Shown: positions 22,069-52,400, counted from the first letter of the stretch. The stretch: 64,000 nucleotides of DNA from Sphaerodactylus townsendi (GCF_021028975.2 NC_059427.1:16988001-17052000), one strand, 5' to 3'. Translations and numbers: made by a program. Notes: a model not told the origin generated them from the sequence alone.

Positions 22069-22084
22069 GATCGTCTTCGCCCGC

Positions 22085-27900: not shown

Positions 27901-30900
27901 GAGCATGTCCCAGGGGTACTGCGGCAATGCTACCGGCCCCCCTCACTTTTGTGGTGTCTCCTGCTGGCACCAGCAAGGATATGGAGCTGGCCCAGGGGGC
28001 AGGGCCTACCACAAGGTCAGCAGCCACTTACCCCCACCCCTGTGCTTCCCTTCACCCTGGGAGGGGAAGGTGGGGGGTGACAAGCAGGGGAACTGGGAGG
28101 GGAAAGTGCGGGGAGGATGGCAGGGGTACCGTGAGATATGAAGAGTGAGGTCAAGGGTACTGTGACGTCAAAAAGGTTGGAGAACACTGCCCTAGGGTAC
28201 AACTACACAGTACACTTTCCTGAGGTATGCCCCTGCATCAAGTAAACTGAGTAGTTCCGGAGGCAAGGTGTTCACAGACATCCAGTTCAGTTTGGATTGG
28301 CTCTACAGGATATGGGGAGATGGTATGAATTGCCCAACCTGGGTAGGGAAATTCCTGTGCATTTGATGGTGGAGCCTGGGGAAAGCAGAATTTGGGGAGG
28401 GACCTCAATTGGGTATTATATATATAATGTCATAGAGTTCCATCCTTCAAAGCAGTAATTTTTCTCCAAGGTCAGTATAGTATGGAGATCAGCTGTAATT
28501 CCAGGAGATCTCTAGGCCCCACCTGGTGTTTACCATATTCAAACCATGAATCGTGAGGGGTTTTTGGCTTCTACAAGCATGTTGGCATTTAGTGAAGGGG
28601 ACAGAGACCAGAATTTAAAAGTGTGACTGGAAAGGATAACATACTAGGAGACCATTTGGGTGACTGGTCCACAATTGTGTCCACAATCACACAACTTTAA
28701 AAGAAAATGGCCAAACATCACATACATGTGGTCACTTTAAATCAGAGGTGGGATCGAGCAGGTTCTCACAGGTTCCCGAGAGTAGGTTACTAATTATTTG
28801 TGTGTGCCGAGAGGGGGTTACTAATTGGTGATTTTGCCACATGATTTTTGCCTTAGTTACGCCCCTCCTCTCAGCAGTAGCGCACAGAACTTGAAGCAGT
28901 CTAGCAGGAGGTGCACCGGTGTGCGTGGCAGCCTGCGCCTGCATACATTCGTTTCCCACCCAAGGACCGGCGCAGCAGCTGCATCCTTGCCACAGCCCTG
29001 CCCAGGAATGCCCCGCCCCCTGAATGCCCGGCCATGCCCCCGTCATGCCCTACCCAGCCCCATTGGCACTACGCCACAGTTTGAATCACACCACCATGGG
29101 AACCTGTTACTAAAATTTTTGGATCCCACCACTGCTTTAAATGATTATATTATTAATCATTGGATTCCTAGGGGCCTTAGAATCCAAAAAGCTCCAGCCA
29201 TTTTCAGAGGATGAGTTTAAAAGTAGGTGGGCTGCAATCCTTAACAAATGTTCACACGATCTCATGGTATCGCTCATAGAAAGCGCTATGGAAGCAGTTT
29301 CATTAACAGAGAAATTGATGAAAGTAACATTGGATAAACTTGAAGAGATGGTATCTAGGGAGGAATTTGAAGCCAAAATGAAACATTGGGATTTAGAAAG
29401 CAAAAAAGTCTGTCAGATAAAATCAGGGAGGCTAAAAGAAGGAAAGTTGCCCAGATGATCCTCAGTGGTCTGGGGTGCAGATTTCAGACCTGTAGCTGTT
29501 TAGCAACAGAGTGATTCAATTCCATTTTCTGGGTGCTAGTCCAGAGAACATCTTCAAGACTACATCTTCAAGACTACTTTTTTAGCTTTAGAAGCTTCAT
29601 TATTGTGGGTTGTTAGCATACACACCAAAGATACAGAAGAATTTTTAAAATTTGTACTTGTGATTAGTGATGGAATATAACCTCGTCAAGCTTATGGAGA
29701 TGTGTTGCAGTCCTTCCCACCTGTGAGTTCAGACCTTCCTCCATCCATACCCCACTCACTCTAGTAATGGACACTTCACTAGTATCAAATAGCAGGGTCT
29801 GTGATATTAAATGTGCACTTGGAAGAGCAAGACCACATCAACGCAATAGACAAGGAGTATCTGCATGAGCAAAAAAATGCCAAGCTACCGGACACAATTC
29901 AAATGATTTACAGATCCAAAATTTGAAAAAATAAGAATTCATAGAATCTGTTTTTCTCATTGTTCTGAACCATTGAATCTCATGGTGACTTTTAGGGGTG
30001 GGCCAAAGAACATAAGACACAAGTTCACTGGCATATCCTGAATTTTGCAGTCAGAACTTTGGATATTTTAGTCCTAAAATGTCAGATTTGTTGTTCACTT
30101 ATTTTTGGGAAGTCCATCCGATCTTGCATTCAGGTGACATATTGTTTCAGCTATTCATAAAGAATAGGTTGTGTGTCAGAACAGGATGGTACCCAAGCTA
30201 CCGGACACAATTCAAATGATTTACAGATCCAAAATTTGAAAAAATAAGAATTCATAGAATCTGTTTTTCTCATTGTTCTGAACCATTGAATCTCATGGTG
30301 ACTTTTAGGGGTGGGCCAAAGAACATAAGACACAAGTTCACTGGCATATCCTGAATTTTGTAGTCAGAACTTTGGATATTTCAGTTCTAAAATGTCAGAT
30401 TTGTTGTTCACTTATTTTTGGGAAGTCCATCCGATCTTGCATTCAGGTGACATATTGTTTCAGCTGTTCATAAAACCAAGGGGCTGCTGATCTCCCCAAT
30501 GCGCTGGCTGCTGACCCTTCCTTCTTTTACATCTGTGCATCACAGAAGCAAACAGAATCTGAGAGGCAGAAAGTCACCTCCCAGTTTGAGCAGCTGCACT
30601 ACTTCCTGGAAGAACAGAAGAGGCTCCTGCTGGCTCACCTGAGTGGACTGGAGAGGGAGATCACTCGGCATCAGAAGGAACACGAAGGGGCGTTTGCAGA
30701 GGAAATTGGCTCTCTCAGCGCCCTGATCAGTGAAGTAGAAGAAAAGTGTGGACAGCCAGACAGTGAATTCCTGTGGGTAAGCCTGTCCACTATTGCTTGG
30801 GAATATGTAGGCGTTGTGCAAGGCACACTATGTATGAATATTAGAACAGTTATAAATAAAATTCCCAGATATTATTGCTTAATGCCTGCTTGGTCAGACA

Positions 30901-33900
30901 GAAGTGAGATGGGTATATACACAACACCTTTCAAGAACACACAACACCACAGACAAAATAGAAGGGGGGAGTGTGCAACCATGCAAGGGTTTGGAGGTCT
31001 TTATCCTGATAAGGACCAACAAGACTGCCAGCAGATTAAAAATATATATAATAAAACTGCATCGTGAAAACCACTAATATCACAAGAAGCATGTCATTTA
31101 AACAATTAAAACCAGAGCTAACAGGCTGAGAGGTAGATGTTGAACAAGAAAAGGCGTCAGGCCAGGGGCCAGAAGAAGACACAAGGAACCTGCAATGCTT
31201 GCACACCCAACTCTATCAAGCATAGAGGAGACAATGGTGTTTTTCTGCTGATGAAAAAGGGAGGGAGGATCCCCTTTAAACACCTCCCAGAAAAGGTGAT
31301 GCTGAAGATCTTGAGACCTGCATGGATAAAAGCCATTAGAGACAGGGGCTGGTAATAAGGAGAGTTGGGTGGGATTAAGCCAAAAAGCTATTGGACCCAA
31401 CCCACTACCTCTAGATGTAGCATCTTCTATTACCATAGTCCAGTGACACATCTTGTGAAATCTTTCCTTCTATGCAACTCTGAAAGAAAAGAGATTTCTT
31501 TCCCTTTCAGTCTTTTGGGATTATATAGCAAAAGACTGAAGTAATGATACTGAGCTCTGACCTGCATAGCCCAGGCTAGCCCGATCTCATCAGATCTTAG
31601 AACCTTTTTGAGACCGAGTGCCCAAATTGCAACCCAAAACCCACTTATTTATCGCAAAGTGCCAACACGGCAATTTAACCTGAATACTGAGGTTTTAGTT
31701 TAGACAAATGGTTGGCTCCGAGGCGTGTGTTACTCGGGAGTAAGCTTGGTGGTAAGTCGGTGGCTTTGCTTTGAAGCAACCGTGCAACTCTTCCAATGGG
31801 TGAATCACAACCCTAGGAGGGTTTACTCAGAAGCAAGCCCCATTGCCAGCAACCGAGCTTACTGCCAAGTAAAGGATCGTGCTTTAGTTCTTCGCATGAA
31901 AATCAGTGGGGCTTAACAATACTTAACAGGGTTACCTACACTGTTTCCCCAAAAGTAGTTCTAGGTTTAATGCTAATAATCGTGCCCAGCAGCCCAGGCC
32001 AGCCTAAATGTGGGGGGGGGGGAGGATTTGTTTGCATGTGCCCACAGAGAGGGCTCTGAGTGCCACCTCTGGCACCCATGCCATAGGTTCGCCACCACTG
32101 TCTTAGAAGCTAAGCAGGGTTAGCCCTGATTAGTATTCGGACAAGAAACCACTATGGAAGTCCAGGTTCAGTATGCAGAGGAAGGCAATGGCAAACCACC
32201 TCTGAAGGTCTCTTGCTTTGAAAGCCCTATGGGGTATCCATAAGTCAGTTGTGATTTGATGGCAAAACAAAGCCCCTCCCTTTTTTTACCTTGGCAGCCT
32301 ATAGGCTTTATTATAAATTGATTCAATTGCTTGCCCATCTCTGCCATCACAATTACTGAATACAATTATCCTGAATACAAGTATTCCCAGGTGTCACTTA
32401 ACCTGAATCTTGCCCCACTGATGTTATCTATCTTAGAATAGCCGGCACTTGTCTATTTCTGTATCACTGTATACAGAACTTTCTTGTGTCAACTTTCTGA
32501 ACTTCCTAGTGTCAATCTTCTGAATTTTAATCACATAAAATTATTTCTTTATTTTATTATTTTATTACATTTATACTCTACCCAATTCCCGGCCAAAGTC
32601 AGGCTCAGGGCAACTTACAAGTAAAGGGTTAAAATCAGAGGTGGGATCCAGCAGGTTCTCACCAGTTCCCGAGAGTGGGTTACTAATTATTTGTGTGTGC
32701 CGAGAGGGGGTTACTAATTGGGTCTGCTTTTCCGTTAGAAATTCCATTAGGTCCAAAAATCATAAAGTTCCTTGTTTAAGGAAAGTATCTTTCTTTTGCT
32801 TTCTAGAAACAAAATTAAGTATTTGAAAGTATTAAGTATTTGACAGGCAGTCAATTAGAGGAGAAGTAGTTGTTTCTGTTGGCAGTAGATGATAGGACTT
32901 GCTATAATGAGTTTAAATTATGGACAGAAAGATACCAGGTGGAAATTAGGAACTTTTTTTACAGTAAGAGTTTTTTACAGTAACAGAGAAATTATTAATG
33001 CCCCGCTCCCGGAATGGCCGGCCACGCCCCCGTGATGCCCCGCCCAGCCCCATTGGCGCTACGCCACTGTTTGAATCCCACCACCATGGGAACCTGTTAC
33101 TAAAATTTTTGGATCCCACCACTGGTGAAAATCCACTACAATATCAGATAGAATCACAATTAAAACATTGCAGTATAAATGCAGTTCTAAGATGGTTCTA
33201 TTTTAATCCTTAAAACCAAAGATGGTCACCAATTAATAAATCCCAAACCAGAATATCAATTTCTGTTTCTCCTTTCTATTCTGTTTACTGTGGGGGGGGG
33301 GGGGTTGTGCGAATGGGGGGGCAGATGCACCAGATGAAAGATGCAGATGATGCTGACAATGGTAATATAAACAGAAGACATGGGAGGCTGGCTACTTCAG
33401 ATGAAATACACAATCACAGGACTGATTTACCTGATAACATAAGAGTGTGCATGGGAAATGTCTTTGCAATCATTAAAAAGTGTACAATCTGCTAGCATGT
33501 ATCCTACCTTAGGATGAAGGAAGTACTTCTAGCCTAAGAAACCTTCCTCATACTTAAGTGAGTCTTCTACTAAAGGAAGAACCTCTTAAGTTGGAGGAAG
33601 ATATCAAACTTTGCTCAATGGAGTGGTAGAATGCACACCAGTGTTACCAGATGCTCTGTTTGTTGCATATGAGACCATCTTCTTCTGTGATCCGGCAAAG
33701 CAAATGTACACATTTTTTCACATGCATCCACCACAATTCACTTATTTTTCACTGGTTTCCCCCCTCCAAATAATCAGTGGTGTACACCAGTGGGTTTCCA
33801 GTATGGATCTAAAATACTGAGAAAGTAGCTAGAATAGCTGATTCTTGTGGCATGCTCTTTCTCTCCCTAACCCCATTTCATTTTTTCCCTCTAGGATATT

Positions 33901-34372: not shown

Positions 34373-36830
34373 TGTATGTGTAAAACTAAATACTTGTTGA
34401 TCGAAAGCTCTTGAAATTATTGCCATTTATTGATCTTTTTGCTGATTTATTGACCTTTTGATAAATGTACAGATTCATTCCTGATTTATGACCAGTTCTC
34501 TTCCTCTGTCTTTTCTGGTATCTCTGTCAGTTCCCTTCCCATTACATCCCAACAGAAAACAGACCCTTCTCATGCATCTGGGCTGAAGGAGCAAACAGGG
34601 CCCTCAGCTCAGACAACATGACTGTTTAAGCATTAAGATACCTCATTTCAGCATTGAATCACTGTTTACAAATAACATATCACTTCTCTTCTTTTAGACA
34701 CTCTGCCGTCAGAAATGGGAACAGAATGGGGTAAGTATCTGGTCTAACCCTTGCAAAAAGACAGGTCTGCTTCTATAAGCAATGGATTATTTGGAGTGCA
34801 GATCCCAAATGTAATACGTGTCCTGTTTACATCCAGATAAGATTACTGCAACGTGCCTTATGTGGAGCTGCTCAGAGCCTGCTCTTGAAGTGTTCAGAAA
34901 CTTTGGTTGGTGCAGAATGCTGCAGCCAGGATGTTGACTGAAGTGAGCGGGCTTAGACTAGACCAGGGGTAGGGAATCTGTGGCTCGAGAGCCACATGCG
35001 GCTCTTCTGCCCTTGCACTGTGGCTCCACGAGCCGAGCCGCCAGCCCCATCCTTGCCCGCCCTGCAGGCAGCAGGGCAGGCGCACCAACTGCCCATGGTC
35101 GGCTGGGCCGCACCGTGGGCTTCCCCTCTTGCCCCCCCCCCCCCGTTGGAGCGGGGCGGGCGCTTTCCCAGCAGCCGGCGAGGCTGAGCCGCCGGCTTCA
35201 TCCTTGCCTGCCCTGCAGGCAGCAGGGCGGGAGCATCCATGTGCTTCTCAGAATGAGCGGAGTCAAAGGTAACCCCCCCCCCATATATATATAGTGTTAT
35301 CTTTATTTTAAATGTCAAAAATTATTTGCGGCTCCAAGTGTTTTCTTTTCCTGTGGAAAACGGGTCCAAATGGCTCTTTGAGTGTTAAAGGTTCCCTACC
35401 CCTGGACTAGACTAACTCTCCTTAGGACTGCATTGTGTATCACCCTAGCCCAGTGATTAAGCATGTAATCCCATGGCCACGGGTGCCCAGAGGTGTGCAC
35501 CTCTTTTCGAGCCCCTCTCTGTGGTGCATCGCACACAGAGTTTGTCATGTGGGGGGCGGAAAATCACACACCCCACACAAACATCTAGGCTGGCCTGGGC
35601 CACTGAGCACAACATGCGCGCACCGCGGTGAGCAGGGAGGACTCGGCTGGCGGGCCTGGTGCCTGTGCTCTGGGTGACTGCTGCCCGAGGGGAGAGGGGC
35701 AGAGGAGACAGAGATGCTAGAGAGGCACAGAGTGGTGCATGCAGGACTTGCTGGAGGCTAGACCAGGCTATCCCCCACTCGAGCAGGTGGGGAGGAGGAA
35801 GAGGGAGCCAACCGTTTTTTTCTAAACTAAAACCTCAGCATTCAGGTTAAATTGCCAGGTTGGCACTTTGCAATAAATAAGTGGGGTTTGGGTTGCAATT
35901 TGGGCACTCGGTCCCAAAAAGGTTCGCCATCACTGCCCTAGCCTTAGCCTTCCTACACTGGCTATCCTTCAAACTCTGCCCTACCTAAACATTGCCCAAA
36001 ATCCCCAGGAGTTTCCCGAAAGGGAGTTGGCATTCCTAGAGCCATTTCTCACCTGCCCACAAAGCTGCTTTTTGAAGCTAATTACAGGTCAAGGGATTTG
36101 ATGCAAAAAGTTCTGTACCAAATGAGGTTAGCTCAGCATTGCAGAAGGAGCTTTTGGATTCTTGTGTCACCTGTGGAACTTTCTTGCAATTCACAGACAT
36201 GTAGTATAAGTGAAACATTCATACGCTCTATCCCAAGATAATTCACTTTCAGTTAGAACGCAGACAAGCAAGTAGTTTCCCCTTACAGAATGTCAATTCC
36301 CTTCCTTTCTTTTTCCAGTCAATGTAACCTTGGATCCAGACACAGCAAACCCCCAAGTTATAATTTCTAAGGACCGAAAAAGCGCCAGATGGGATGTCAC
36401 CAGGACCGATGTCACGCCTAGCACAAAGCGATTTAAGTCCTCTTGCTGCGTGCTGGCTTCGGAAGGTTTCACATCTGGAAGACATTACTGGGAAGTCAAC
36501 GTGGAAGACGGAGGCATCTGGGTCGTAGGGGTAGCCAGAGGATCTGTGGGGAGAAAGATGGAGCTGAAGTTGACCCCAGAGGAAGGGATCTGGGCCTTGC
36601 AAGGAGATTTTGGTCAATATCATGCTCTCACCATCCCCGTGACCCCCTTGTCTCTCAGCTACACCCCCAGGAAGATCCGAGTGTTTCTTGACTACGAGAG
36701 AGGGCAGGTGGCCTTTCTAAATGCTGACACAAAGGATTCAGTCTTTACTTTTGCATCAATTTCATTTGCTGGAGAGGTGATCTTCCCCTTTTTTAAAGTG
36801 CTGCTTTCCCAGCTGACGCTCGATGGCTGA
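24540..36830 (+). CDS. TRIM-C: RING/B-box/coiled-coil/PRY-SPRY E3 ligase (TRIM27/39-like), ~473 aa
   Basis: Exons 24540-24950, 27055-27150, 30546-30776, 33895-33917, 34118-34233, 34698-34730, 36319-36830; in frame with canonical splice sites. Confidence 0.92.
25790..26850 (-). mobile_element. L1/Tx1-type LINE RT fragment
   Basis: LNKSPGSDGLPALYY..VPDSWRDAN motif. Confidence 0.75.
27055..27150 (+). CDS. TRIM-C exon 2 (96 nt)
   Basis: KEIYSRLQSMKEEREKLLGLKLTGDLRHQEYL|GTAAAT. Confidence 0.88.
27859..28189. mobile_element. hAT MITE
   Basis: TSD ccctaggg. Confidence 0.8.
28600..29870 (+). mobile_element. Degenerate Penelope-like element ORF
   Basis: DYIINHWIPRGLRIQK / RWAAILNKCSHDLM / YTKDTEEF peptides, split by a hAT insertion. 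Confidence 0.55.
28743..29134. mobile_element. hAT element (same family) inserted in a Penelope-like ORF
   Basis: TSD ctttaaat. Confidence 0.88.
29880..30473. repeat. ~281-bp direct duplication (offset 313 bp)
   Basis: 29880-30160 vs 30193-30473, with only a few substitutions. Confidence 0.9.
30546..30776 (+). CDS. TRIM-C exon 3 (231 nt)
   Basis: KQTESERQKVTSQFEQLHYFLEEQ...CGQPDSEFLW|GTAAG. Confidence 0.92.
31555..32265 (+). mobile_element. 5S rRNA-derived SINE (5S-Sauria-like), split by a hAT
   Basis: cccgatctcatcagatcttagaa|gctaagcagggttagccctgattagta plus gaggaaggcaatggcaaaccacctctg tail. Confidence 0.75.
31603..32100. mobile_element. Same hAT family, nested in a 5S-derived SINE
   Basis: TSD tcttagaa; left TIR truncated. 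Confidence 0.8.
32636..33124. mobile_element. hAT element (related subfamily)
   Basis: TIRs cagaggtgggatcc/ggatcccaccactg; TSD gttaaaat/gtgaaaat. Confidence 0.85.
33895..33917 (+). CDS. TRIM-C exon 4 (23 nt)
   Basis: ctctag|DIKNTMRR|GTATGT. Confidence 0.85.
34118..34233 (+). CDS. TRIM-C exon 5 (116 nt)
   Basis: FDKKQFQAPEEKSVKVEKGLREFSERNVALAEILNNFK|GTATT. Confidence 0.88.
34303..34368. repeat. (CT)n microsatellite
   Basis: Seen directly in the sequence. Confidence 0.95.
34698..34730 (+). CDS. TRIM-C exon 6 (33 nt)
   Basis: ttttag|(D)TLPSEMGTEW|GTAAGT. Confidence 0.85.
34964..35404. mobile_element. hAT MITE
   Basis: TIR caggggtaggga; TSD gactagac. Confidence 0.85.
35451..35935. mobile_element. 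Same hAT family, opposite orientation
   Basis: TSD ccctagcc. Confidence 0.8.
36319..36830 (+). CDS. TRIM-C exon 7 (PRY-SPRY)
   Basis: VNVTLDPDTANPQVIIS..TSGRHYWEVNV..IRVFLDYERGQVAF. Confidence 0.95.
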
Positions 36831-38640: not shown

Positions 38641-40400
38641 CCTGTGAGTAGATGCACCTATGTTCTCAGTCACTGTTGGCTCATTACTATTTTGTTGTGG
38701 GTCAGCCCCAGGGAAGTGAGGATTCCTCAGAAGAAGAGCTGGCCCTGAAGAACTCAGTCCAACCAGAGTTCCAACAGGGTGAGACTTCAACTCAGCCAGA
38801 GCCCCCAAAGGGTAAGAGCTCAGGCCAGTCAGAGCCCACCTGTGTGGAATCGAACAGCAGGCTGACCAAGGTTCAGAACCCAAAGTGTGACAGAAGCACC
38901 TCCTGTCCCTGACTCAGAACTAGCTGAGGATTAATGGGTGATTAGTCTACCATGGTCTCTTGTGCCAGCGAATCTATGTAGACAGTGTTGCTAAAAGGAG
39001 ATGCAGGCTAAAAGGTGTCGTGCTTGTTTACTAGTTCACTGGCAGGTATTTGAACAAGAGAGGAATGAGTATCCACAGGATGAGGATTCGTCTCCTATGG
39101 GAGAGCTATTTGGGAAGCAGGCAGATGTGGATACAACTGTGCAACTTGACTGCTGTCTTGCTGACAGGACTCCGTGAACCTCTGACTTCCAGACCAGATC
39201 CGTTGGACTTTGATCTTGTGTAATGGATCCTCGGCCTCCTGTTTTGATAATCAAGGCTTTTGACTTGGCAATTCCTGACTCTCTGTCTGGCATTTCTAAA
39301 AAGGTTCCTGCTTTTGAGTTGTCTGTAGCTTGGTTGGCTCTCTCACTACAGGCAAGCCTGGATACTGTAAACCAACACCCCTGGCCTGCAGCCTAGACCA
39401 GCACGTATTTTCAATTAGACCAGTCATATAGTTTTACAATCAAACATTCCATAAGTGTATAACTATTTGTCAGCCATTATCTGATTAACCTTATCTTAGA
39501 TTGTACCTTTCACTGAAGGCTGATCTCATTATCCTTTTGCCACTTTGGATTCTTTGTTCCCTTATTAAAATGGTTCTTCTATCTCTTGGATATGTTCCAG
39601 ACTTCCCTGTCGGGTTGCTTCCCCACAGAGATTATGCTCTGTTCTGGCATCTGTGCAGGAATGTATTTGTGGGGGTCGGATGGGGTAGGGATAGAAGCAT
39701 CTGCATGGCATCTTGCTCTAATTGTCCATTTGTTTTGGGTATATACTCCTCCAAACCTGCTTTGCAGTAATCTTTTGAGGCACAGTGAAGTCCAAGCACG
39801 TTATCAGGCCATTCTGGACAGAAGGTGCTTATTTTCAACGGTCTCGCCAGCAGCCCCTTGTAAATTTTGTTTGTTCTGCTGTTTTAAAGGCTGCTTTATG
39901 CAGTGCCTTGGAATCCCACTATTCTTTAACTTAGATGGTGATGACAGCCATTGATTAGAGCATTCCAAGAGTAAAGCTGGAGTAAACAGATGTTCTACAA
40001 GTTGATTCAAGAAAAGAGAGGGGTATGGTATCACAACAGAGCCCAAGCATGTCACATTACATGAACCTGAGTAAAAATTCATGTTGGAAAAAAATCTCAA
40101 ATTTTTAACTAAATAAGTAAGTTTATTGAAGGAATGACATGGAAATTGGAGCCCACCCAATTTAAAAGGATAGATGGAATTTTCATAAAACTTCCCTGCT
40201 TGGATCTTGGTAATGGAAAGGCAAGTTTCATCACTCAGAAGTGGTTTGCCATTGCTTGCCGCTGCTCATTTATCCTCATCAGCTGCCATTTTTCTGCCAT
40301 CATGCCACCAGAGGGCTTTTAAAAAAAATCAATAATTGTTACTTCACTGTGCTACAACAGCCCTCATCTGGAGAGTCCAGAAACTGAGAAGGGTTCGGCC

Positions 40401-40885
40401 CAGAGGTGGGATCCAGCAGGTTCTCACCAGTTCCCGAGAGTGGGTTACTAATTATTTGTGTGTGCCGAGAGGAGGTTACTAATTGGGTCTGCTTTTCCGT
40501 TAGAAATTCCATTAGGTCCAAAAATCATAAAGTCCTATTGTTTCCTACGTGGCTGGTTAGCGAAGGTAGAAAACGGGATAATTCTCCCTGTTGGGCTGTT
40601 TTAAAAACATGTTTTAGAAAGATGGTAAAGTTCCTTGTTTAAGGAAAGTATCCTTCTTTTGATTTCTAGAAACAAAATTAAGTATTTGAAAGTATTAAGT
40701 ATTTGACAGGCAGTCCATTAGAGGAGCAGTAGTTGTTTCTGTTGGCAGTAGACGATAGGACTTGCTAAAATGAGTTTAAATTACGGACAGAAAGATACCA
40801 GCTGGAAATTAGGAACTTTTTTTACAGTAAAAGTACAGTACAGTAAAAACAGCAAAATTATTAATGCCCCGCCCCCGGAATGCCC
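40401..40885. mobile_element. hAT element truncated at the left array junction
   Basis: Collinear with 32636-33015, then switches abruptly into the array spacer. Confidence 0.8.
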
Positions 40886-41638
40886 TCTTGGCAGAGCATT
40901 GGACCCCCTCGGAGGTTAACGGTCCTCGGGAAGGGAAGAAAATTCAGCATCGGACACCTAAAGCGTTCCTTGACCCTTTCCCGACCTCTATTTCTTTTGC
41001 ACCCTGCACTGCTCCTCCGGACAGGGGGGGGGGGCTGGTGCCAGGGTTTTGCTGTGCTCCATTCTGTGTGCACAACGATCCTGCGAGGTAGGTCAGGCCG
41101 AGTGGGTGAGAGGCAGGGGCGCTTAGAGTCCCCAGGCCGCCTGCCGGGCTCGCACTGGGGCTTTCCAGAAGCTAGCCGCACACTGCAGCCGCTGTGATGG
41201 CAGGAAGGCTCTGTACGGCTCGGAAAGGCGGCAAAGCTTTTCATGCTCAGGTGGAAGGTGAGGTGGCACTGTCGAAGCCGTGATCCCTCCCCCGGTTCTG
41301 GACAGGAGACTGAAGCCATTGGCGAGCAGTTCGACATGGCGCCCGGGCGGAGAGGTGATGGAGGAGTCTTGGAAGCGTCAAGAATGGGCAGCAACTGCAA
41401 GGGGAGAAGAGAGTGAGAATGGGCCAAAGGGCATAGCTGCTTGGAGGCAAGGGAGGGGAGGTGGCTCCTTTGTGGGGCAGGCCCAGGGCCGTGAGGTGTG
41501 CCGGGGCCTGGGACGCCTCGGCTGGTCCTGGGTTGAAGAGTGGTGCATGCTGGGCCAGAGTCCGCAGAGGCAAAAGGTATCTTGCACCTGGGCGGGGGTG
41601 TGGAGGGGGACAGCAGCCCGTTCAAGTGAGGCACAGGA

Positions 41639-41758
41639 NNNNNNNNNNNNNNNNNNNNNNNNNNNNNNNNNNNNNNNNNNNNNNNNNNNNNNNNNNNNNN
41701 NNNNNNNNNNNNNNNNNNNNNNNNNNNNNNNNNNNNNNNNNNNNNNNNNNNNNNNNNN
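41639..41758 (+). rRNA. Putative 5S rRNA gene copy 1 (inside N-run 41639-41787)
   Basis: Sequence not visible. Inferred from the fixed 149-nt slot, the upstream GGGCGG near -49, the GCC start seen in copy 3 and the 5S fragment at the array end. Confidence 0.55.
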
Positions 41759-42841
41759 NNNNNNNNNNNNNNNNNNNNNNNNNNNNNCGCTGTGCCGGCC
41801 CCTCGCTCTCTCTTTTCCTCCTCCCCGCCAACGTCGCCCCGTGTGCCGGAGACCATCAGCCGCCAAGGCACCCGTTCCTCACACAAACATTCCCTTCACC
41901 TTTGGTGCACACCCCCTGACAAAAAGGTGTACCGCCGCTTGGAAAGGGGCCAAGGGGTTTCCCCTGGATTTTTCTCCCTGCCCGCTGCGCTCACCCAAAG
42001 GGCAAGACTCTCTGCTCGAGGCCTCTTGGCAGAGCGATGGGCCCCCTCGGAGGTTAACGGTCCTCGGGAAGGGAAGAAAATTCAGCATCGGACACCTAAA
42101 GCGTTCCTTGACCCTTTCTCGACCTCTGTCTTCCCTTTGCACCCTGTCCTGCTTCTCGGTGGGGGGCGGGGCGGGCGCCAGGGTTTTGCTGTGCTCCATT
42201 CTGTGTGCACAACGATCCTGCGAGGTAGGTCAGGCCGAGTGGGCGAGAGGCAGGGACGCTCGGAGTCCCCAGGACGCCTGCCGGGCTGGCACCGGGGCTT
42301 CCCTGACCCGAGCCGCAAACTGTAGCCGCTGCGATGGCGGGAAGGCTCTGCACGGCTTGGAAAGGCGGCAAAGGTTTTCATGCTCAGGTGGAAGGTGAGT
42401 TTTCCAAAGAGGATGCGGAGCCGCTGAGAGGAAGCATCGATGCATGCGCTGCTGTATTGGGGAGCTGGCACTGTCGAAGCCGTGATCCCTACCCCGGTTC
42501 TGGACAAAAGACTGAAGCCTTTGGCGAGCAGTTCGACATGGCGCCCGGGCGGAGAGGTGATGGAGGAGTCTTGGAAGCATCAAGAATGGGCAGCAACAGC
42601 GAGGGGAGAAGAGAGTGAGAATGGGCAAAAAGGGCGTTGCTGCTTGGAGGCAAAAGGGAGGGAGGTGGCTCCTTTGTGAGGCAGGCCCAGAGCCGTGAGG
42701 TGTGCCGGGGCCTTGGACGCCCCGTCTGGCCCGGGTGGAAGAATGGTGCGTGCTGGGCCAGAGTCCGGAGAGGCGGAAGGTCTCTTGTTCCTGGGCGGGG
42801 GTGTGGAGTGGAACGGCAGCCCGTTCAAGTGAGGCGCAGGA

Positions 42842-42961
42842 NNNNNNNNNNNNNNNNNNNNNNNNNNNNNNNNNNNNNNNNNNNNNNNNNNNNNNNNNNN
42901 NNNNNNNNNNNNNNNNNNNNNNNNNNNNNNNNNNNNNNNNNNNNNNNNNNNNNNNNNNNNN
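42842..42961 (+). rRNA. Putative 5S rRNA gene copy 2 (inside N-run 42842-42990)
   Basis: Same inference as copy 1; lies 1203 bp downstream of it. Confidence 0.55.
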
Positions 42962-43692
42962 NNNNNNNNNNNNNNNNNNNNNNNNNNNNNCGCTGTGCCG
43001 GCCCCTCGCTCTCTCTTTTCCTCCTCCCCGCCAACGTCGCCCCGTGTGCCGGAGACCATCAGCCGCCAAGGCACCCGTTCCTCACACAAACCATCCCTTC
43101 ACCTTTGGCGTACACACCCAGCCAAAAAGATGCACTGCCACTTTGAAAGGGGCCAAGGGGTTACCCCTCGATTTTTCTCCCAGCCCACTGTGCTCAACCA
43201 AAGGGCAAGACCCTTGCTCCAGGCCTCTTGGCAGAGCGATGGGCCCCCTCGGAGGTTAACGGTCCTCGGGAAGGGAAGAAAATTCAGCATCGGACACCTA
43301 AAGCGTTCCTTGACCCTTTCCCGACCTCTATTTCTTTTGCACCCTGCCCTGCTCCTCCGGAGGGGGGGGGGGCTGGCACCAGGGTTCTGCGGTGCTCTAT
43401 TTGGTGTTCACAACGATCCTGCGAGGTAGGTCAGGCCAAGTGGGCAAGAGGCAGGGGTGCTCGGAGTCCCCAGGCCGCCTGCCGGGATCGCACTGGGGCT
43501 TTCCTGAAGCTAGCCACACACTGTAGCCGCTGTGATGGCGGGAAGGCGGCAAAGCTTTTCATGCTCAGGTGGAAGGTGAGTTTTCCAACGAGGATGCGGA
43601 GCCGCTGAGAGGAAGCATCGATGTGTGCGCTGCTGTGTTGGGGAGGTGGCACTGTCGACGCCGTGATCCCTACCCCGGTTCTGGACAGAAGA

Positions 43693-45315
43693 TGTTACAG
43701 CGAATTGCCAGTAACAATAAGTGATTTCAGCTCAGCAACTTAATGAGGCGTAAGAAGCAGGTGTTTCTTTAAAGCAGGAAGGATTTTATTGCAAGTGATT
43801 TCTTGGCACAACTCAGCAAAAAGGACCCCACATGGCTGTGCAACAGCCCCTTTTATACATTTCCCAGTAACCCAGAAAAGAAAGGAGGTGTGGGGCAATC
43901 CCACGCCCACAGTCCAAAACCCAGGAAGGAGGCGGTCTCCTTCCATCTAATACAGAGAAAATACCCTAGAACAGTGATGGCAAACCTTTTTGAGACCAAG
44001 TGCCCAAACTGCAATCCAAAACCCACTTATTTATCACAAAGTGCCAACGCGGCAATTTAACCTGAATACTGAGGTTTTAGTTAGAAAAAATGGTTGGCTC
44101 TGAGCCATGCGTTACTCGGGAGTAAGCTTGGTGGTAGTTGTTGACTTTGCTTTGAAGCAACCATGCAACTCTTCGAACAGGTGAATCACGACCCCAGGAG
44201 GGTTTACTCAGAAGCAAGCCACATTGCCAGCAACTGAGCTTACTCCCAGGTGAAGGATCGTGCTTTAGTTCTTTGCATGAAAATCAGTGGGATTTAACAG
44301 CGCTTAACAGGGTTATCTATACTGCTTCCCCAAAACTAGGTCTTAGGTTTAATGCTAATAATCGAGCCCAGCGGACCAGACCAGCCTAGATGTGTGTGTG
44401 TGGGATTTCCCCCCCCCACACACACACACACACATGATGAACTCTGTTTGTGCGTGCCCACAAGAGGGCTCTGAGTGCCATCTCTGGCACCCGTGCCATA
44501 GGTTCGCCATCACTGTCCTAGAACACCAAAGGGAGAAAACAATCCCTTTGCACATGCTGAAGAGATCAAATCCCAGAAGCAAAAGCCTGCACCTCCTTGC
44601 CTGAGGTGGTTCCTTGGGAGTGTTAGACAAAGACAAGTTTAAATGATCCAATGAATTCTTGGATCCTGAAAGTAAGGATGTGAACAGTCCAATGAGCTTC
44701 TGGATCCTGAGAGTAAAACTTCAAACAGTCCAATAGCAAAACAGGATGACATCTTCCAAGGCTGGGTGACCCTTGGGTGCTGGCAACAGATTCGATTAGC
44801 AAGTCCAAAGAGGGTCGTTGTTCTTATCAAAGGGCCGGCTGGGCGTTGGTCTAAGCAGCATTCCAGAGTCAACTTCCTTGTCACATAATATCAGACCTTT
44901 ACTGGCTATTGCTTCTATTCTCAGACACTAATTTCAAAAATAACATTTCTAACTTAAACATTAGGAAAACCTTAAAGGATAAACACACATACTTATACTT
45001 ATAGGCAGCACTGTACATCTACCTACTGGCAGGGCTCGCTTAAAATTAATAGAACCTTAACCTAACTGAAGAACCTTGTTAAACTAAAATCCTAAACTGC
45101 AGGCATAAACTTAACTAAGAGGAGCTTTTACCACATCCTAGAATGACACAAACACAAGGGAAACCATATAGCCTTGGCACAATCATGCATATACATTCTT
45201 TGTAAACCTTATGAAGGCTTCTGAACCACACAAGTCTCCGTGTCCAGGCATGGAGCCAGTGTACTAAGCAACCTGACTTCAGGAAATTATTTTGTTTATT
45301 TTCCTGTCGATAACA
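43693..45315 (-). mobile_element. Solo LTR inserted in an array spacer
   Basis: TGTTA...TAACA termini; 4-bp TSD AAGA (43689-43692 / 45316-45319); the spacer resumes exactly after it. Minus-strand TATAAAA (43851-43857) and AATAAA (43785-43790). Confidence 0.85.
43972..44515. mobile_element. hAT non-autonomous element (OC1/Charlie-like) nested in the solo LTR
   Basis: TIRs cagtgatggc..gccatcactg; TSD ccctagaa/tcctagaa. Confidence 0.85.
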
Positions 45316-45647
45316 AAGACTGAAGCCATTGGCAAACAATTGGACATGGCGCCTGGGCGGAGAGGTGATGGAGGAGACGTGGAAGCGTCAAGAATGGGCA
45401 GCAGCCGCGAGGGGAGAAGAGAGTGAGAATGGGCCAAAGGGCATAGCTGCTTGGAGGCAAGGGAGGGGAGGTGGCTCCTTTGTGGGGCAGGCCCAGAGCC
45501 GTGAGGTGTGCCGGGGCCTTGGACGCCCCGTCTGGCCCGGGTGGAAGAATGGTGCGTGCTGGGCCAGAGTCCGGAGAGGCGGAAGGTCTCTTGTTCCTGG
45601 GCGGGGGTGTGGAGTGGAACGGCAGCCCGTTCAAGTGAGGCGCAGGA

Positions 45648-45767
45648 GCCNNNNNNNNNNNNNNNNNNNNNNNNNNNNNNNNNNNNNNNNNNNNNNNNNN
45701 NNNNNNNNNNNNNNNNNNNNNNNNNNNNNNNNNNNNNNNNNNNNNNNNNNNNNNNNNNNNNNNNNNN
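45648..45767 (+). rRNA. Putative 5S rRNA gene copy 3
   Basis: GCC is visible at 45648-45650 (bird/reptile/amphibian 5S begins GCCUACGG). It is followed by 130 N and 16 visible nt, completing the same 149-nt slot. Confidence 0.6.
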
Positions 45768-46591
45768 NNNNNNNNNNNNNTGGCTCCTGCAGCAGTCGCT
45801 GGGGCGGACCCTCGCTCGCTCTTTTCCTCCTCCCCACCACCGGCGCCCCGTGTGCCGGACACCATCAGCCGCCAAGGCACGCCTTCCTCACACAAACATT
45901 CCCTTCACCTTTGGTGCACACCCCCTGACAAAAAGGTGTACCGCCGCTTGGAAAGGGGCCAAGGGGTTTCCCCTGGATTTTTCTCCCTGCCCGCTGCGCT
46001 CACCCAAAGGGCAAGACTCTCTGCTCGAGGCCTCTTGGCAGAGCGATGGGCCCCCTCGGAGGTTAACGGTCCTCGGGAAGGGAAGAAAATTCAGCATCGG
46101 ACACCTAAAGAGTTCCTTCACCCTTTTCCGACCTCTATGCACTCTTACCTGCTTCTCCGGAGGGGGGGGGGGCTGGCACCAGGGTTCTGCGGTGCTCTAT
46201 TTGGTGTTCACAATGATCCTGTGAGGTAGGTCAGGCCGAGTGGGCGAGAGGCAGGGGCGCTCGGAGTCCCCAGGCCGCCTGCCGGGCTCGCACTGGGGCT
46301 TTCCTGACGCTAGCGGCACACTGTAGCCGCTGTGATGGCGGGAAGGCTCTGCACGGCTAAGAAAGGCGGCAAAGGTTTTTATGCTCAGGTGGAAGGTGAG
46401 TTTTCCAAAGAGGATGCGGAGCCGCTGAGAGGAGGAGGCCTCGATGCGCGCGCTGCTGTGTAGGGGAGGTGGCACTGTCGAAGCCGTGATCCCTCCCCCG
46501 GTTCTGGACTGAAGCCATTGGTGAGCAATTCGACATGGCGCCTGGGCGGAGAGGTGATGGAGGAGACTTGGAAGCATCAAGAATGGTCATT

Positions 46592-46609
46592 AGGGTCGGG
46601 CCTGGTTAG
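46592..46609 (+). pseudogene. 18-nt 5S rRNA internal fragment terminating the array
   Basis: AGGGTCGGGCCTGGTTAG is identical to the vertebrate 5S internal control region (..AAGCAGGGTCGGGCCTGGTTAGTACTT..). Confidence 0.7.
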
Positions 46610-48150
46610 CAGTGGCATAACTAGGCAAACTGGAGCCCTGGGCAAAACCGGAGTTTGATGCCCCCAGGCGCGTGCCCGGTGCAACGTGCAACCCCCCGGT
46701 TCCCTTGTAGCTACGCCCAGTGCCATATCTAGGCAAACTGGAGTTTGCCCCCCCCCCATGGGCAGCCGCCCTCCCCCATTGTGACCAAGCATTGATTTTT
46801 TTACACCAGGTCGTTTCAACGTCACTATCACATTATAGAACATGCCCCAACTCACAAACTGAGCACAGCAATAGGCCGTGCCACACAGCAGAAATAATTT
46901 TTTTGAAAACATTTTCAAAATGCTTTCAAAATGTTTTATTACTGCTATGAAAACATTTTATGGTGTTGTATCCAGTCCCCCCAATTGGGGCAAACCGCAT
47001 CACTTTCAATGTTATTTAAACTGAGCACCCCAGATTCTCCCTTTAAGGTGGATTTAAAAAGAGAACCCGGGGGGGTTTAAAAGGAAAATCTGGGGACATT
47101 TGGGGGGTGCTTGCTGTCAGAGGTGAAATTGTTAAGCTAGCAACTTTCAGCGTATCTTTAGGAGACTCTCCTAATGATATCACCCATGTTTGGTGAAGTT
47201 TGGATCAGGGAGTCCAAAGTTATGGACACTCAAAGGTAGCCCCCATCTTCTGGTAGCTCCCCTTTGGGAGTCCATAGCTTTGGACTCCCTGGACCAAACT
47301 TCACCAAACCTGGGTGGTATCATCAGGAGAGTCTCACCAAGATACCCTGAAAGGTTGGTACTGCTAGCTTAACAATTGCACCCCTGATAGCAGGCACCCT
47401 CCAAATTTTCCCAGATTCTCCCTTTAAATCCACCTCCTTTGGCATGGACTTAAAGCAGTGGCTCTCAACCTTTCCAATGCCGTGACCCTTTAATACAGTT
47501 CCTCATGTTGTGGTGACCCCCCAACCCTAATATTTATCCATTTTACAGATGGAGAACACTGATGCAGAGAGTCTTAGGTGACCCCTGTGAAAGGGTCGTT
47601 CGACCCCCAAAGGGGTCCCGACCCCACTGGTTGAGAACCACTGACTTAAAGGGAGAATGTGAGGTCCCCAGTTTAAACATTGAAAGTGGTGCTGTTTCAG
47701 GGTGGGGGATAAACCACCCCAAAACAGCATCACTTTTGATTCTCTCTTTAAGGTGGATTTAAAAGAAGAATCTGGACTTCCTAGTTTAAACACCATTGAA
47801 AGTGATGCTGTCTGGGGGTGGATTCTACTGGAGGTGTTTTGTGAGAGATGATACTGTCATTTGTTTGGTAAATGTTTTGCTGGGAGTGATTTGTGAGAGA
47901 TTTACATGCTTAATACCCACTTGCACTGGCTTGGAGCTGTTTCTCAGGCTAACAACCTACCTCATAGGGTTGGTGTGAGGACAAAAATAGGAAAGAGAGT
48001 TGGTGGGGAGAGAGCCATGTATGTTTTGCTGGGGGTGGGAGGTGTTTTGTGAGCTGGTGTAAAAAAATCATTGTTTGGTCGTGGTGGGGGAGTGTGACCG
48101 CCAAACTCAGGTTTTGTCCCCAGGCTCCAGTTTGCCTAGATACACCTCTG
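46610..48150. mobile_element. hAT-like element(s) at the right array junction
   Basis: cagtggcataactaggcaaactgg ... ccagtttgcctagatacacctctg inverted ends; contains the SPIN MITE. Confidence 0.6.
47456..47643. mobile_element. SPIN-like hAT MITE
   Basis: cagtggctctcaacc..gaccctttaatacagttcctcatgttgtggtgaccccc; TSD acttaaag. Confidence 0.85.
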
Positions 48151-48759
48151 TGAATTGCACAGCATTGATAACCACACAGATAGGTACCTGCCAACTGCAG
48201 GTAATCTTGCAAGTCTCGGGAAATTGGTTAGACTTTAATTCCAGTCATTGTTTACACTGCTAAACTGTCCGTATGGTGAAAAGCCCCTTCACTCACGCAC
48301 ACAAATGAAGCTGCCTTATCCTGAATAAGCTCATTGGCCTATCAAGACCAGTATTGTTTATTCTGACTGGCTGGCTCTCCAGACTTTCTGGCTGAAGTTT
48401 TCCACACCATTTCCTACCCGATCCTTTGACCTGGAGATGCCGGGGACTGAACATGGGACTTTTTCCAACCCAAGTCGCAAAAGACACAAGATCCTCCCTA
48501 GGAATTTTTGAAAGTAAAACCATTTACTCCCGAGTCCCTTACGCTCATCTCAACTAGGAAGACGCTGCAAACGGATAATGCATCCAATACACTACAGATA
48601 ATGCATCAAATATAATTCAAAAAATGCATCAAATACAATACAAATAACGCATTAAATACAAATAATACAATACAAATAATGCATTAAATACAAATAAATA
48701 CAACTAATTACGAATCCTTCTATTAGTGATATGCTCGAGCTCATCACAGTTCAGCCTTC

Positions 48760-49450
48760 ACAGCTCCGATGTTTCCAAAACACCCGACCCACATTTTCCC
48801 CGACGGCTCCGCTCTGGAACCGCCTCCCGGGTCCGTGTGGTGGGCGTCCCGGGCGCTTCCTGGCGCTCTCCCTCGGCCAATCAGATGCCCCCTAGCGAGC
48901 CACATGTGGCCTCCCCTCCACGAATCCTCCCTTCCCCATCATGGCTGGCGAGAGCCCTTTGGAGATCCTGCAGCGGGAGATCACCTGCTCCATCTGCCTG
49001 GGCTACTTCAAGGAGCCGGTCTCCATCGACTGCGGGCACAACTTCTGCCAGGCCTGCATCACGCAGTGCTGGGGGCGGTCGGACGACGAGAACACGTCGT
49101 GCCCGCAGTGCCGGCGCTGGTCGCGGAAGAGGAGCTTCAGGCCCAACCGGGAGCTTGGCAACGTGGTGGAGGTGACCAAGCGGCTGCGGCTGGAGGCGGT
49201 CCACGCGCTGGCCGGGCAGCGGCTGTGCGAGAAGCACCAGGAGCCCCTGAAGCTCTTCTGCGAGCAGGACGAGACGCCCGTCTGTGTCATCTGCAGGGAG
49301 TCGCGGGTCCACAAGGCCCACCCCATGCTGCCCATCGAGGAGGCGGCCCAGGATTACAAGGTGGGTCCGCCGCCCCCTTTACCTTGCCCCGGTTCCCCCG
49401 TGTCACCGGAGGCCGACCCTTTGGAAGAGCAGAGGCGACCCTGCATTTGT
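48760..49450 (+). promoter_or_regulatory. CpG island over TRIM-D promoter/exon 1 with CCAAT box (ctcggccaatcag ~48872)
   Basis: Visibly dense in CpG and GC compared with the flanks. Confidence 0.65.
48941..49360 (+). CDS. TRIM-D exon 1 (RING + B-box2), CpG-rich
   Basis: MAGESPLEILQREITCSICLGYFKEPVSIDCGHNFCQAC..CPQC..CEKHQEPL..AAQDYK|GTGGGT. Confidence 0.94.
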
Positions 49451-52400
49451 CACCACCAACCTCTGCTGCCTCCCTCTTCGCCATAATCCTGTGCATCTCC
49501 ACTCAGAAGCACCTCTCGTGGTGGGGTTTGCTAGATTGCTGTGCATGGGATTGCAGTTTGTGCAGGGTTACCAGGCCAGACAACCGACTCCCTCTCTGTT
49601 CCACTCAGATCTGTCCACAGTGATCCATGCAGTGGTCACGTCCAGGCTAGATTACTGTAATTCACACTACGTTGGCCTGCCCTTTAGACTGCTCCAGAAA
49701 ATGCAACAGTTGGGAGAGTGCTCACCGGGACTCTGGTCAGGGAACATATAAGATCTGTATTCTGCTGACTGCACTGGTTCCCATTTGAATTTTGGTGTTA
49801 ACCTTTGAGCAGAACCTTTGTATCTTCAGGACTGCATCTCCGCACACAAGAGGACTCTTTGATCCTCTGATAGCAATCTACTGGTGGTCCCTGACCCCAA
49901 GGACATTCAGCTGACTTCCACCAGAGCCAGGGCTTTGGACATCAGGCTTCTGAGGGATATAAACTAGTTCTTCAGAGCCTGTAAGACCAAGATGTTTTGC
50001 CAGGCCTACAGCTAAAGCCGCTTGGTCCATATTGTGTTATACTGGCCCCAAGACTCTACCCCCTCCTCTTCCAGCCTGTAGGACTTTGAAACTATGGCAA
50101 GAGTTAGACTTAATATTTATTTTATTTATTTATATCCCGCCCTATCCCTGCAGGGCTCAGGCAATGTATTCGCCAAACCGCCATCTGAGAAATTATTATC
50201 CATTAGAAGGTTTTTATTTATTGATATAGCGTTTTTAGATTGTGACTTAAGTATGTTTGTTATCTGCCCTGAGCCTGGCCTTGATTGGGGAGGGTCATCC
50301 TGGTTTCGCATTTGGGTGAGAGACCCTTTGGCAGTTTACCCAGAAACAAGCTGTCTGGCAGGGCTACATGGGTCCTTGGACCCAGCAGAAAGGTAAACCT
50401 GGGTGAAGCAGGTTGTGATCAAGAGCAGCTTTAGAAGAAGAAGAAGAGTTTGGATTTATATCCCCCCTTTCTCTCATGTAGGGAGACTCAAAAGGGCTTA
50501 CAGTCTCCTTGCCCTTCCCCCTGTGAGGTGGGTGGGGCTGAGAGAGCTCCGAAAAGCTGTGACTAGCCCAAGGTCACCCAGCTGGCGTGTGTGGGAGTGC
50601 ACAGGCTAATCTGAACTCCCCAGATAAGCCTCCACAGCTCAAGCGGCAGAGCGGGGAATCAAACCCGGTTCCTCCAGATTAGAATGCACCTGCTCTTAAC
50701 CACTACGCCACGGCTGCTCCTGTCTTCTGACTTGGGGAAGGTTGTGGCAGCAGAAAGCAAGCCTGTCTGAAAGAGCAATGGCTCTCTGGGCGGCCCTAGA
50801 AGGATGGAACTAATTAGGGTTGCACTGTAAGGCTGTGATCCTGAACAGACCTTTTATATGGGACTAAGCCCCCTGGAAACCAGTGGGAGAAACCTGCATA
50901 GGATCAGGTTGCAAGCGGTCAAAGCAGAAAACAGCCTTCCCAAAATCTGGTGGGGGTGGGGATGGGGGAGAGGTTCCTTAATGCCTTCCTAACATGTCTT
51001 TTGGTCTATGTTCAGAAAAGAGTTGCCATCCACCTGAAAGCCCTGAAGTACAGGAGAGAAAAACTGAAAGAGTCTAAAGAGGACTTGGAGTGCAGAACCC
51101 AGGCCGATCAGGTAGGTTCTTGTCTCAGTTGTCCAGGAAGATCCGAGATGTGAGGGATGCCTCTTTGTTTTCATGCTGGGGAAAGAGTGAATCAGTTTGG
51201 AATGACTAAAACCCAGTCTCCTCAGGTGCCATCCTTACTGTAGGGCGCTTTTACCTTTCACTTGTAGGTTTAATTAAGCGAGGGCGTTGACAGTATGACG
51301 GGTCTTATCATGTGCAGCCGTTGTGTCCCTCACAACAGGATCTCATGGCTCTTGAGGACACAGGCTGTGATGTTTTGGGCCTGTTTTTTTTTCTGTTGCT
51401 GCCCTGGAAGGGATGAGGCAGGTACCTTCCAATGAGGCTGCGCTGTTGGAAGTTATTTAAGTGTGGAACGCTGCTTGAGCAGGCAGCTTGAAAGAGTTAA
51501 GTCTTATCTGCATTATTAAATAGCCTGTTGTAATCACCTGCTGTAATTAATAGACTAGAATCATAGGTGTCAAACAGGCCCTGATGGGAACTGTAGTCCA
51601 TTACATCTGGAGGGCCGTGAGTTTGACACCTGTGGACTAGATGGTTAGTTTTGTATTTTGTCAATTGTTGCTTTCAGCCTTTGGTCCTGCGTACGTTGAG
51701 AGAAAGACCAGCTATATAAACATTCTAAAGAAATAAGTCTTCTCCATTTCAAGGTTTTCTTGCCCTTATCAATAGTATTTCCCTCTTTACTAAGCATACA
51801 TATTCTCTGCCCCCCTCAACTAAAGCAATTTGTGCTCCTTGCATTAAAAAAATGATCTGTGTGCATCCCCTCTTTCTTTGTCTGGGGTCATCAGAGCTAA
51901 GCAGGGTTCTCCAGTAAGAGAATAAAACTGCTGATATCATAAACTGGAGCACCTTCCCTATGAGGAGAGGCTGCAGCATTTGGGACTCTTTAGTTTGGAG
52001 AGGAGACGTCTGAGGAGGGATATGATTGAAGTCTATAAAATTATGCATGGGGTAGAAAATGTTGACAGAGAGAAATTTTTCTCTCTTTTTCACAATACTA
52101 GAACCAGGGGGCATCCATTGAAAATGCTGGGGGGAAGAATTAGGACTAATAAAAGGAAACACTTCTTCACGCAACGTGTGATTGGTGTTTGGAATATGCT
52201 GCCACAGGAGGTGGTGATGGCCACTAACCTGGATAGCTTTAAAAGGGGCTTAAACAGATTTATGGAGGAGAAGTCGATTTATGGCTACCAATCTTGATCC
52301 TCTTGGATCTGAGATTGCAAATGCCTTAACAGTCCAGGTGCTCGGGAGCAACAGCTGCAGAAGGCCCTTGCTTTCACATCCAGCACGTGAGCTCCCAAAG

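What the first reader, a model, noticed from the sequence alone, without database searches (positions are those of the whole stretch)
40884..46609. Hidden 5S rDNA mini-array embedded in a TRIM/B30.2 immune-type gene cluster
Seen: a GC-rich 1203-bp unit repeated about 4 times, with N-runs always in the same 149-nt slot. In the third unit the slot begins with a visible GCC, there is a GGGCGG box ~49 nt upstream, and the array ends in an exact 18-nt piece of 5S. Known: bird, reptile and amphibian 5S starts GCCUACGG, and 5S genes occur as tandem units with GC-rich spacers. Inference: three 5S genes plus a broken fourth sit between TRIM-C and TRIM-D, invisible to annotation. They could be an orphon, or the collapsed edge of the main 5S locus. 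Pol III/TFIIIC sites here might insulate C from D.
Basis: partly seen in the sequence, partly recalled or inferred. Interest (0 to 1): 0.78.

Follow-up and report, generated by a model that had tools for sequence, protein, structure and literature searches.

The report
Probable small 5S rRNA gene cluster
Between two immune-type TRIM genes of a gecko lies a short, worn tandem repeat that most likely carries three 5S ribosomal RNA genes, whose letters this scan masked on purpose; it is a side copy of a family with tens of copies, so an ordinary kind of feature.

Summary
The repeat is real. A GC-rich unit of about 1203 bp occurs about 3.6 times at 40884-46589. A 149-nt slot sits in register in three units. 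It is fully N in two. In the third it shows GCC, 130 N and 16 visible letters. Equal slot lengths show the N runs are masks over real letters, not gaps.
- head-to-tail gene-plus-spacer layout;
- a visible GCC start;
- GGGCGG at -49 in all three units;
- no snRNA-type promoter or 3' box;
- CpG-rich spacers;
- read and contig depth giving tens of copies per genome in four runs under four different coded organism labels.

I put 5S at about 0.75-0.8.

- The fourth unit stops about 250 nt before its slot would begin, so the 18-nt 5S-like piece is out of register. It abuts the end of a very high-copy inverted-repeat transposon.
- Unit 3 is split by a 1.6-kb mobile-element insertion.
- Unit spacers differ by 5-9%, so this is an old side cluster, not a homogenised array.
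- "Hidden from annotation" is an effect of this scan's masking.
- The insulator idea has no support.

In human, the 5S array also lies about 146 kb from TRIM17. Interest is low to moderate.

The parts
40400..40883 (+). Left neighbour: a copy of an inverted-repeat DNA transposon (MITE-like), truncated at the array junction. The fuller copy at about 32636-33130 continues for a further 115-130 nt.
40884..41638 (+). Partial unit 0: the 3' 755 nt of a spacer. It carries a 67-nt deletion relative to the other units.
41590..41595 (+). GGGCGG box at -49 of slot 1. The same box is at 42793-42798 and 45599-45604 for slots 2 and 3.
41639..41787 (+). Slot 1: 149 masked letters, the putative 5S rRNA gene plus its immediate 3' flank.
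41788..42841 (+). Full spacer, 1054 nt, GC 62%, CpG o/e 0.67. Together with a slot it makes the 1203-bp unit.
42842..42990 (+). Slot 2: 149 masked letters.
42991..43692 (+). Spacer of unit 3, the part before the insertion. It carries a 20-nt deletion.
43693..45315 (.). Insertion of about 1.6 kb that splits unit 3. Its ends are TG...CA and it is flanked by a duplicated AAGA (or ACAnAAGA). It contains a ~540-nt repeat also present at 31601-32108.
45316..45647 (+). Spacer of unit 3, the part after the insertion. Its last ~190 nt are identical to the matching part of the preceding unit's spacer (before slot 2).
45648..45796 (+). Slot 3: visible GCC, then 130 masked letters, then 16 visible letters, 149 nt in all.
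45797..46589 (+). Truncated last spacer. It ends about 250 nt before the position of a fourth slot.
46592..46609 (+). 18-nt 5S-like piece, out of register with the array, between the array's end and the transposon terminus. Its origin is unresolved.
46610..48151 (.). Right neighbour: a composite element with inverted ends (CAGTGG... on the left, CAGAGG... in reverse on the right). Raw-read depth is in the thousands. No target-site duplication is visible.
36330..36830 (+). PRY/SPRY (B30.2) last exon of the upstream TRIM gene (TRIM-C).
48941..49486 (+). RING + B-box first exon of the downstream TRIM gene (TRIM-D), 2.35 kb from the array's end.

Best explanation
The block is a small, diverged side cluster of the genome's 5S ribosomal RNA gene repeat. 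Three gene slots are separated by GC- and CpG-rich spacers of about 1.05 kb. It lies in the 12-kb gap between two class-IV TRIM genes of a gecko.

Inferred mechanism: each slot would be read by RNA polymerase III from an internal type-1 promoter (TFIIIA, then TFIIIC and TFIIIB), starting at the G of the visible GCC and ending at a T run that lies inside the mask.

Inferred history:
- A few units were copied out of, or left behind by, the main array of tens of copies, and joined to a transposon-rich intergenic stretch.
- The units then drifted 5-9% apart, with some exchange between them.
- One unit took a 1.6-kb mobile-element insertion.
- The last unit was cut off in its spacer, beside a high-copy inverted-repeat element.

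Shown: the repeat, its register, the mask-not-gap nature of the N runs, the copy number of the family, and the neighbours. Inferred: that the slot is 5S, and whether these copies are expressed.
For: - Head-to-tail 1203-bp units with a constant 149-nt slot.
- A visible GCC at the slot's first three positions in unit 3. From my own knowledge, sauropsid and amphibian 5S RNA starts GCCUACGG, while human starts GUCUACGG. A local match to human would then begin at +4, exactly where the unit-3 mask begins.
A 120-nt 5S gene is the obvious human-like item of this size that occurs in tandem.
- GGGCGG at -49 is conserved in all three units. There is no octamer, PSE core, TATA or snRNA 3' box in the array.
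- Spacer GC is 62% and CpG o/e is 0.5-0.67, against 0.31-0.38 in the flanks.
- Copy number: raw-read depth on the spacer is 11-26, against roughly 0-4 on nearby unique sequence. Collapsed spacer contigs have depth 524 against 23, and 618 against about 20. That gives tens of copies per genome in several relatives.
- Pairwise spacer identity is 91-95%, with a mosaic pattern.
- 5S genes form a single FISH locus in another gecko (PMC4524605).
- The human 5S array lies about 146 kb from TRIM17 and TRIM11 (PMC5203791 and PMC6221133).
Against: - No letter of the gene beyond GCC was seen, and Rfam finds nothing in the visible sequence.
- The mask (130-149 nt) is longer than a 120-nt 5S gene, and I cannot explain its exact ends.
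- No T-run terminator is visible. The 16 visible letters after the unit-3 mask lack one; it would have to lie inside the mask.
- Tens of copies is at the low end for a vertebrate 5S family.
- Units 5-9% apart are unlike an actively homogenised array, so these copies may be pseudogenes.
Confidence: 0.75

Rival explanations
1. This is the edge of the main 5S locus. The real array here is tens of units long and the assembly has collapsed it to 3.6 units.
For: A near-uniform variant of the same spacer, at 20-30 times single-copy depth, exists in short-read contigs of relatives and is not seen in this window. Edges of tandem arrays are known to be less homogenised (general knowledge).
Against: The window is continuous: the N runs are masks of exact length. 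Adjacent units differ by 5-9% and so are easy to assemble. Both ends abut other sequence and then unique TRIM exons.
Confidence: 0.12
2. The slot holds another conserved small RNA gene, not 5S: an snRNA such as U4 or U12, a pair of tRNAs, or a Y or vault RNA.
For: The mask length of 130-149 nt is nearer to U4 or U12 than to 5S. The gene letters were not seen.
Against: There is no PSE core, octamer, TATA or 3' box in the visible flanks. From my own knowledge, none of these RNAs starts GCC in vertebrates, and they are not known as 1.2-kb tandem arrays of tens of copies in sauropsids. tRNA-Sec in the same window was not masked, so short tRNA-sized matches seem to escape the mask.
Confidence: 0.08
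3. The 18-nt piece at 46592-46609 is the relic of the fourth unit's own 5S gene. It would have been brought next to the spacer by a deletion of about 310 nt and then cut by the transposon.
For: A 5S fragment lying 2 nt past the last aligned base of a probable 5S array is unlikely to be a coincidence. The transposon's inverted-end symmetry starts only at 46610, so the piece is outside it. One contig of a relative aligns only from 46614 (record 3).
Against: The piece is out of register. Nothing to the right of the transposon continues 5S or the spacer, and no target-site duplication is visible. This genome is noted to carry SINEs with a 5S part (scan notes s1-753651 and s1-758303), and 5S-Sauria SINEs are known in lizards (PMC10946416). 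The depth bin that holds the piece is about 4000-fold.
Confidence: 0.35
4. The N runs are ordinary assembly gaps and the slot is an artefact.
For: The scan's program labels them as gaps.
Against: Three slots have exactly the same total length, 149 nt. One of them is partly visible. All are in register with a 1203-bp repeat, and the lengths are not round numbers.
Confidence: 0.02

Closest known systems
Vertebrate 5S rDNA tandem arrays (for example the human 1q42 array of 2.2-kb units, and Xenopus somatic and oocyte 5S repeats)
   Same: Head-to-tail units made of one short gene slot plus a GC-rich non-transcribed spacer. A multicopy family. In human, a neighbourhood of TRIM genes.
   Different: Only three slots. 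Units are 5-9% apart rather than homogenised. One unit is split by a transposon. Gene letters were not seen.
5S orphons, minor 5S loci and 5S pseudogene clusters described in many animals
   Same: A few diverged units away from the uniform main family, bounded by unique DNA and transposons.
   Different: Whether the genes here are intact or expressed is unknown. The position of the main array in this genome was not determined.
5S-derived SINEs of squamates (5S-Sauria, Piskurek et al. 2009, cited in PMC10946416)
   Same: They could explain an isolated 18-nt 5S-like piece beside high-copy DNA.
   Different: No SINE body or tail follows the piece. What follows is the terminus of an inverted-repeat element.

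Membership tests
5S rDNA tandem repeat | A gene of about 120 nt that matches the 5S rRNA covariance model (RF00001), with box A, the intermediate element and box C | not testable with these tools
   The visible letters give no hit.
5S rDNA tandem repeat | Head-to-tail units of one gene plus a non-transcribed spacer, with the gene in register | tested here: met
   1203-bp period; a 149-nt slot at the same unit position three times.
5S rDNA tandem repeat | Transcript starts GCC... (sauropsid/amphibian type) | tested here: inconclusive
   GCC is visible at the first three slot positions of unit 3 only. Three letters are weak evidence.
5S rDNA tandem repeat | Pol III terminator (T run) directly after the gene | not testable with these tools
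   The expected place, +121 to +125, is inside the mask. The 16 visible letters at +134 to +149 have no T run.
5S rDNA tandem repeat | Multicopy family in the genome | tested here: met
   Spacer depth is roughly 10-30 times single-copy depth in one raw-read run and two contig runs, and higher but less reliably in a third contig run.
snRNA gene array (Pol II, or Pol III type 3) | Proximal sequence element near -55, octamer enhancer, TATA (type 3) and a 3' box after the gene | tested here: not met
   Simple pattern scans of the array on both strands found none outside the insertion. The patterns are crude.
TFIIIC/Pol III chromatin insulator | Bound TFIIIC with a measured barrier or enhancer-blocking effect | not testable with these tools
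   No binding or expression data were available.
Class-IV TRIM gene cluster (the context) | A RING + B-box exon and a PRY/SPRY exon on the same strand | tested here: met
   Pfam hits at 48941-49486, 60614-61090, 36330-36830, 21556-22101 and 12825-13358. The best PDB relatives are BTN3A/2A, TRIM15, TRIM7, TRIM11 and TRIM21.

The most novel reading that the evidence does not exclude
The link between 5S genes and B30.2-type TRIM genes is ancestral to amniotes. On this reading the gecko mini-cluster marks the old 5S site, as the human array sits beside TRIM11 and TRIM17. The uniform main array has either stayed nearby or moved away, leaving this relic. A bolder version is that the Pol III units act as a boundary just 2.35 kb upstream of TRIM-D.
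Probability: 0.12. Interest if true: 0.45.

Novelty: new member of a known kind. Interest (0 to 1): 0.25.

Why it matters
If the slots are 5S, this is one more minor 5S locus. It is useful for annotating the gecko genome and for tracing how 5S units escape the main array and decay. The only wider point is the possible old linkage of 5S genes and TRIM genes, which is also seen in human. That is cheap to test by synteny, but I could not test it here.

Tried and rejected
- **Rfam.** Searches of the whole window at gathering scores, of 40000-47600 at E up to 10, and of 201 nt around the 18-mer all gave no 5S hit. That is expected with the gene masked and only 18 letters visible.
- **tRNA scan.** Only tRNA-Sec at 29449 was found.
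- **Gap reading.** Rejected, because the slot length is equal in all three units.
- **Fourth gene in place.** Rejected on register.
- **Transposon remainder.** I looked for the rest of the left-flank transposon, or of 5S or the spacer, to the right of the array and of the 46610-48151 element. Nothing was found.
- **TRIM orthology.** PDB names give a mixed list (BTN3A, TRIM15, TRIM7, TRIM11, TRIM21), so orthology with human TRIM11/TRIM17 is undecided. A scan note of a histone H1 gene 120 kb upstream (s1-743368) would fit the human 6p22 region at least as well.
- **Literature.** I found no published unit structure for gecko 5S rDNA. A 16-nt core of the piece occurs in six papers, at least three of them on 5S or Pol III transcripts. 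The held text of the newt paper did not show it.
- **Masked letters.** I did not lay reads or contigs over the N runs, or within 170 nt of them. I did not look at other copies of the masked places, including the fourth N run at 22489-22631.
- **Large protein searches.** Not used, as nothing rested on them.

Full report
**What is there.** Reading 40500-47000 and the repeat search show a GC-rich tandem repeat from 40884 to 46589. Alignment of the spacers gives a full spacer of 1054 nt (41788-42841). Together with a 149-nt slot this makes a 1203-bp unit. The block is laid out as follows:
- a partial spacer, 40884-41638;
- slot 1, 41639-41787;
- a full spacer;
- slot 2, 42842-42990;
- a spacer split by an insertion of about 1.6 kb (43693 to about 45315);
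- slot 3, 45648-45796;
- a last spacer that stops at 46589.

That is three slots and about 3.6 unit lengths.

**Gaps or masks.** The window has four N runs, of 143, 149, 149 and 130 letters. In unit 3 the slot shows GCC, then 130 N, then 16 visible letters. That totals 149, exactly the length of the all-N slots of units 1 and 2, measured between the same conserved flanking words. Gaps of estimated length would not reproduce this. The N runs are therefore masks laid over real letters, and the sequence on both sides is continuous. I laid reads only on a stretch that starts 170 nt beyond the nearest N run, and I looked at no other copies of the masked places.

**What the slot most likely is.** Direct proof is out of reach. 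Rfam finds only a tRNA-Sec gene in the window and nothing 5S-like in the visible letters. The indirect evidence is coherent:
- The layout, one short gene slot in register per GC-rich spacer, is that of 5S rDNA.
- The slot begins GCC in the one unit where its start is visible. From my own knowledge, sauropsid 5S RNA starts GCCUACGG and human starts GUCUACGG. A local match to human would then start at +4, which is where the unit-3 mask starts.
- GGGCGG sits at -49 in all three units. Simple scans find no octamer, PSE core, TATA or snRNA 3' box in the array, which speaks against snRNA-type genes.
- The spacers have 62% GC and CpG o/e of 0.5-0.67, against 0.31-0.38 in the flanks.
- The spacer belongs to a multicopy family (see the next paragraph).

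**Copy number.** In raw reads of a relative (X14, about 2% of the run read), depth on 45950-46557 is 11-26. On nearby unique bins it is roughly 0-4. In contig runs, a collapsed spacer contig has depth 524 against about 23 for single-copy contigs (X7) and 618 against about 20 (X10). That is tens of copies per genome. The collapsed variant is about 90% like the window's last unit. At the listed variant positions it agrees with the other units in the window, not with the last one.

**State of the cluster.** Pairwise spacer identity is 91-95%. Some segments are shared between non-adjacent units, and there are private deletions of 67, 20 and 7 nt. This is far from a homogenised array. It looks like an old side cluster (an orphon-like locus) or a decayed array margin. 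Whether the three genes are intact or expressed is unknown. All three are still human-like enough to have been masked, which is a weak point in their favour.

**Ends of the block.** On the left, the array starts inside a copy of an inverted-repeat transposon whose fuller copy lies at about 32636-33130. The copy beside the array lacks its last 115-130 nt.

On the right, unit homology stops at 46589, about 250 nt before a fourth slot would begin. A few unmatched letters follow, then the 18-nt piece (46592-46609). At 46610 begins an element with inverted ends that runs to 48151. Its raw-read depth is in the thousands.

The 18-mer occurs once in the window and is far beyond chance. A 16-nt core of it appears in six papers, at least three of them on 5S or Pol III transcripts. 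It is out of register, so it is not simply a broken fourth gene in place. It may be any of three things:
- a rearranged relic of a 5S gene;
- a scrap of one of the 5S-bearing SINEs noted elsewhere in this genome (scan notes s1-753651 and s1-758303), and known in lizards;
- part of the neighbouring element.

I could not decide between these.

**Context.** The array lies between the PRY/SPRY exon of one TRIM gene (36330-36830, +) and the RING/B-box exon of the next (48941-49486, +), 2.35 kb from the latter. Earlier follow-up notes of this scan call the genome a gecko; I did not test that. In another gecko, 5S genes map to a single chromosomal site.

In human, the only 5S array is at chr1:228.74 Mb (hg19). 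TRIM11 and TRIM17 are at 228.59-228.60 Mb, about 146 kb away. So 5S genes beside TRIM genes are not odd in themselves. Whether the gecko TRIM genes are orthologues of those human genes is untested. PDB relatives are a mixed list led by butyrophilin B30.2 domains, and a scan note of an H1 gene 120 kb upstream would fit human 6p22 as well.

**Verdict.** The 5S reading is probable (about 0.75-0.8) but unproven here. The 'fourth gene', 'hidden' and 'insulator' parts are not supported. This is a new member of a well-known kind of feature, of low to moderate interest.

Noticed in passing
window 29449-29536 (+): A selenocysteine tRNA gene (anticodon TCA). Rfam gives 55 bits against a gathering score of 47, and ARAGORN finds it too. 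It lies inside the TRIM cluster and is not masked.
   Followed up: partly
window 22489-22631: A fourth N run of 143 letters, about 390 nt beyond the start of the RING/B-box ORF of the minus-strand TRIM gene at 21556-22101. It is followed by a stretch with repeated GTCTTAT(T/A)TT motifs that looks like a SINE tail. It may be another human-like small-RNA-derived piece.
   Followed up: no
window 32636-33130, 40400-40883, 28743-28828, 11217-11302, 13735-13831: A family of short inverted-repeat transposons whose ends begin CAGAGGTGGGATCC. One copy is cut off by the array.
   Followed up: partly
window 46610-48229 and 50358-50500: Very high-copy repeats. Raw-read depth is 600 to 27000 at about 1-2-fold genome sampling. 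They include a foldback at 47144-47353 and a ~190-nt piece (47451-47643) that also occurs at 5980-6194.
   Followed up: partly
window 44387-44435: A palindromic (TG)n...(CA)n microsatellite inside the insertion. It gives weak chance matches to mir-297 and mir-466 models, far below their gathering scores.
   Followed up: yes
window 48534-48837: Almost no raw reads from the related species in run X14 lie here, just upstream of the TRIM-D first exon and partly over a tandem repeat at 48575-48703. The stretch may be diverged or absent in that species.
   Followed up: no
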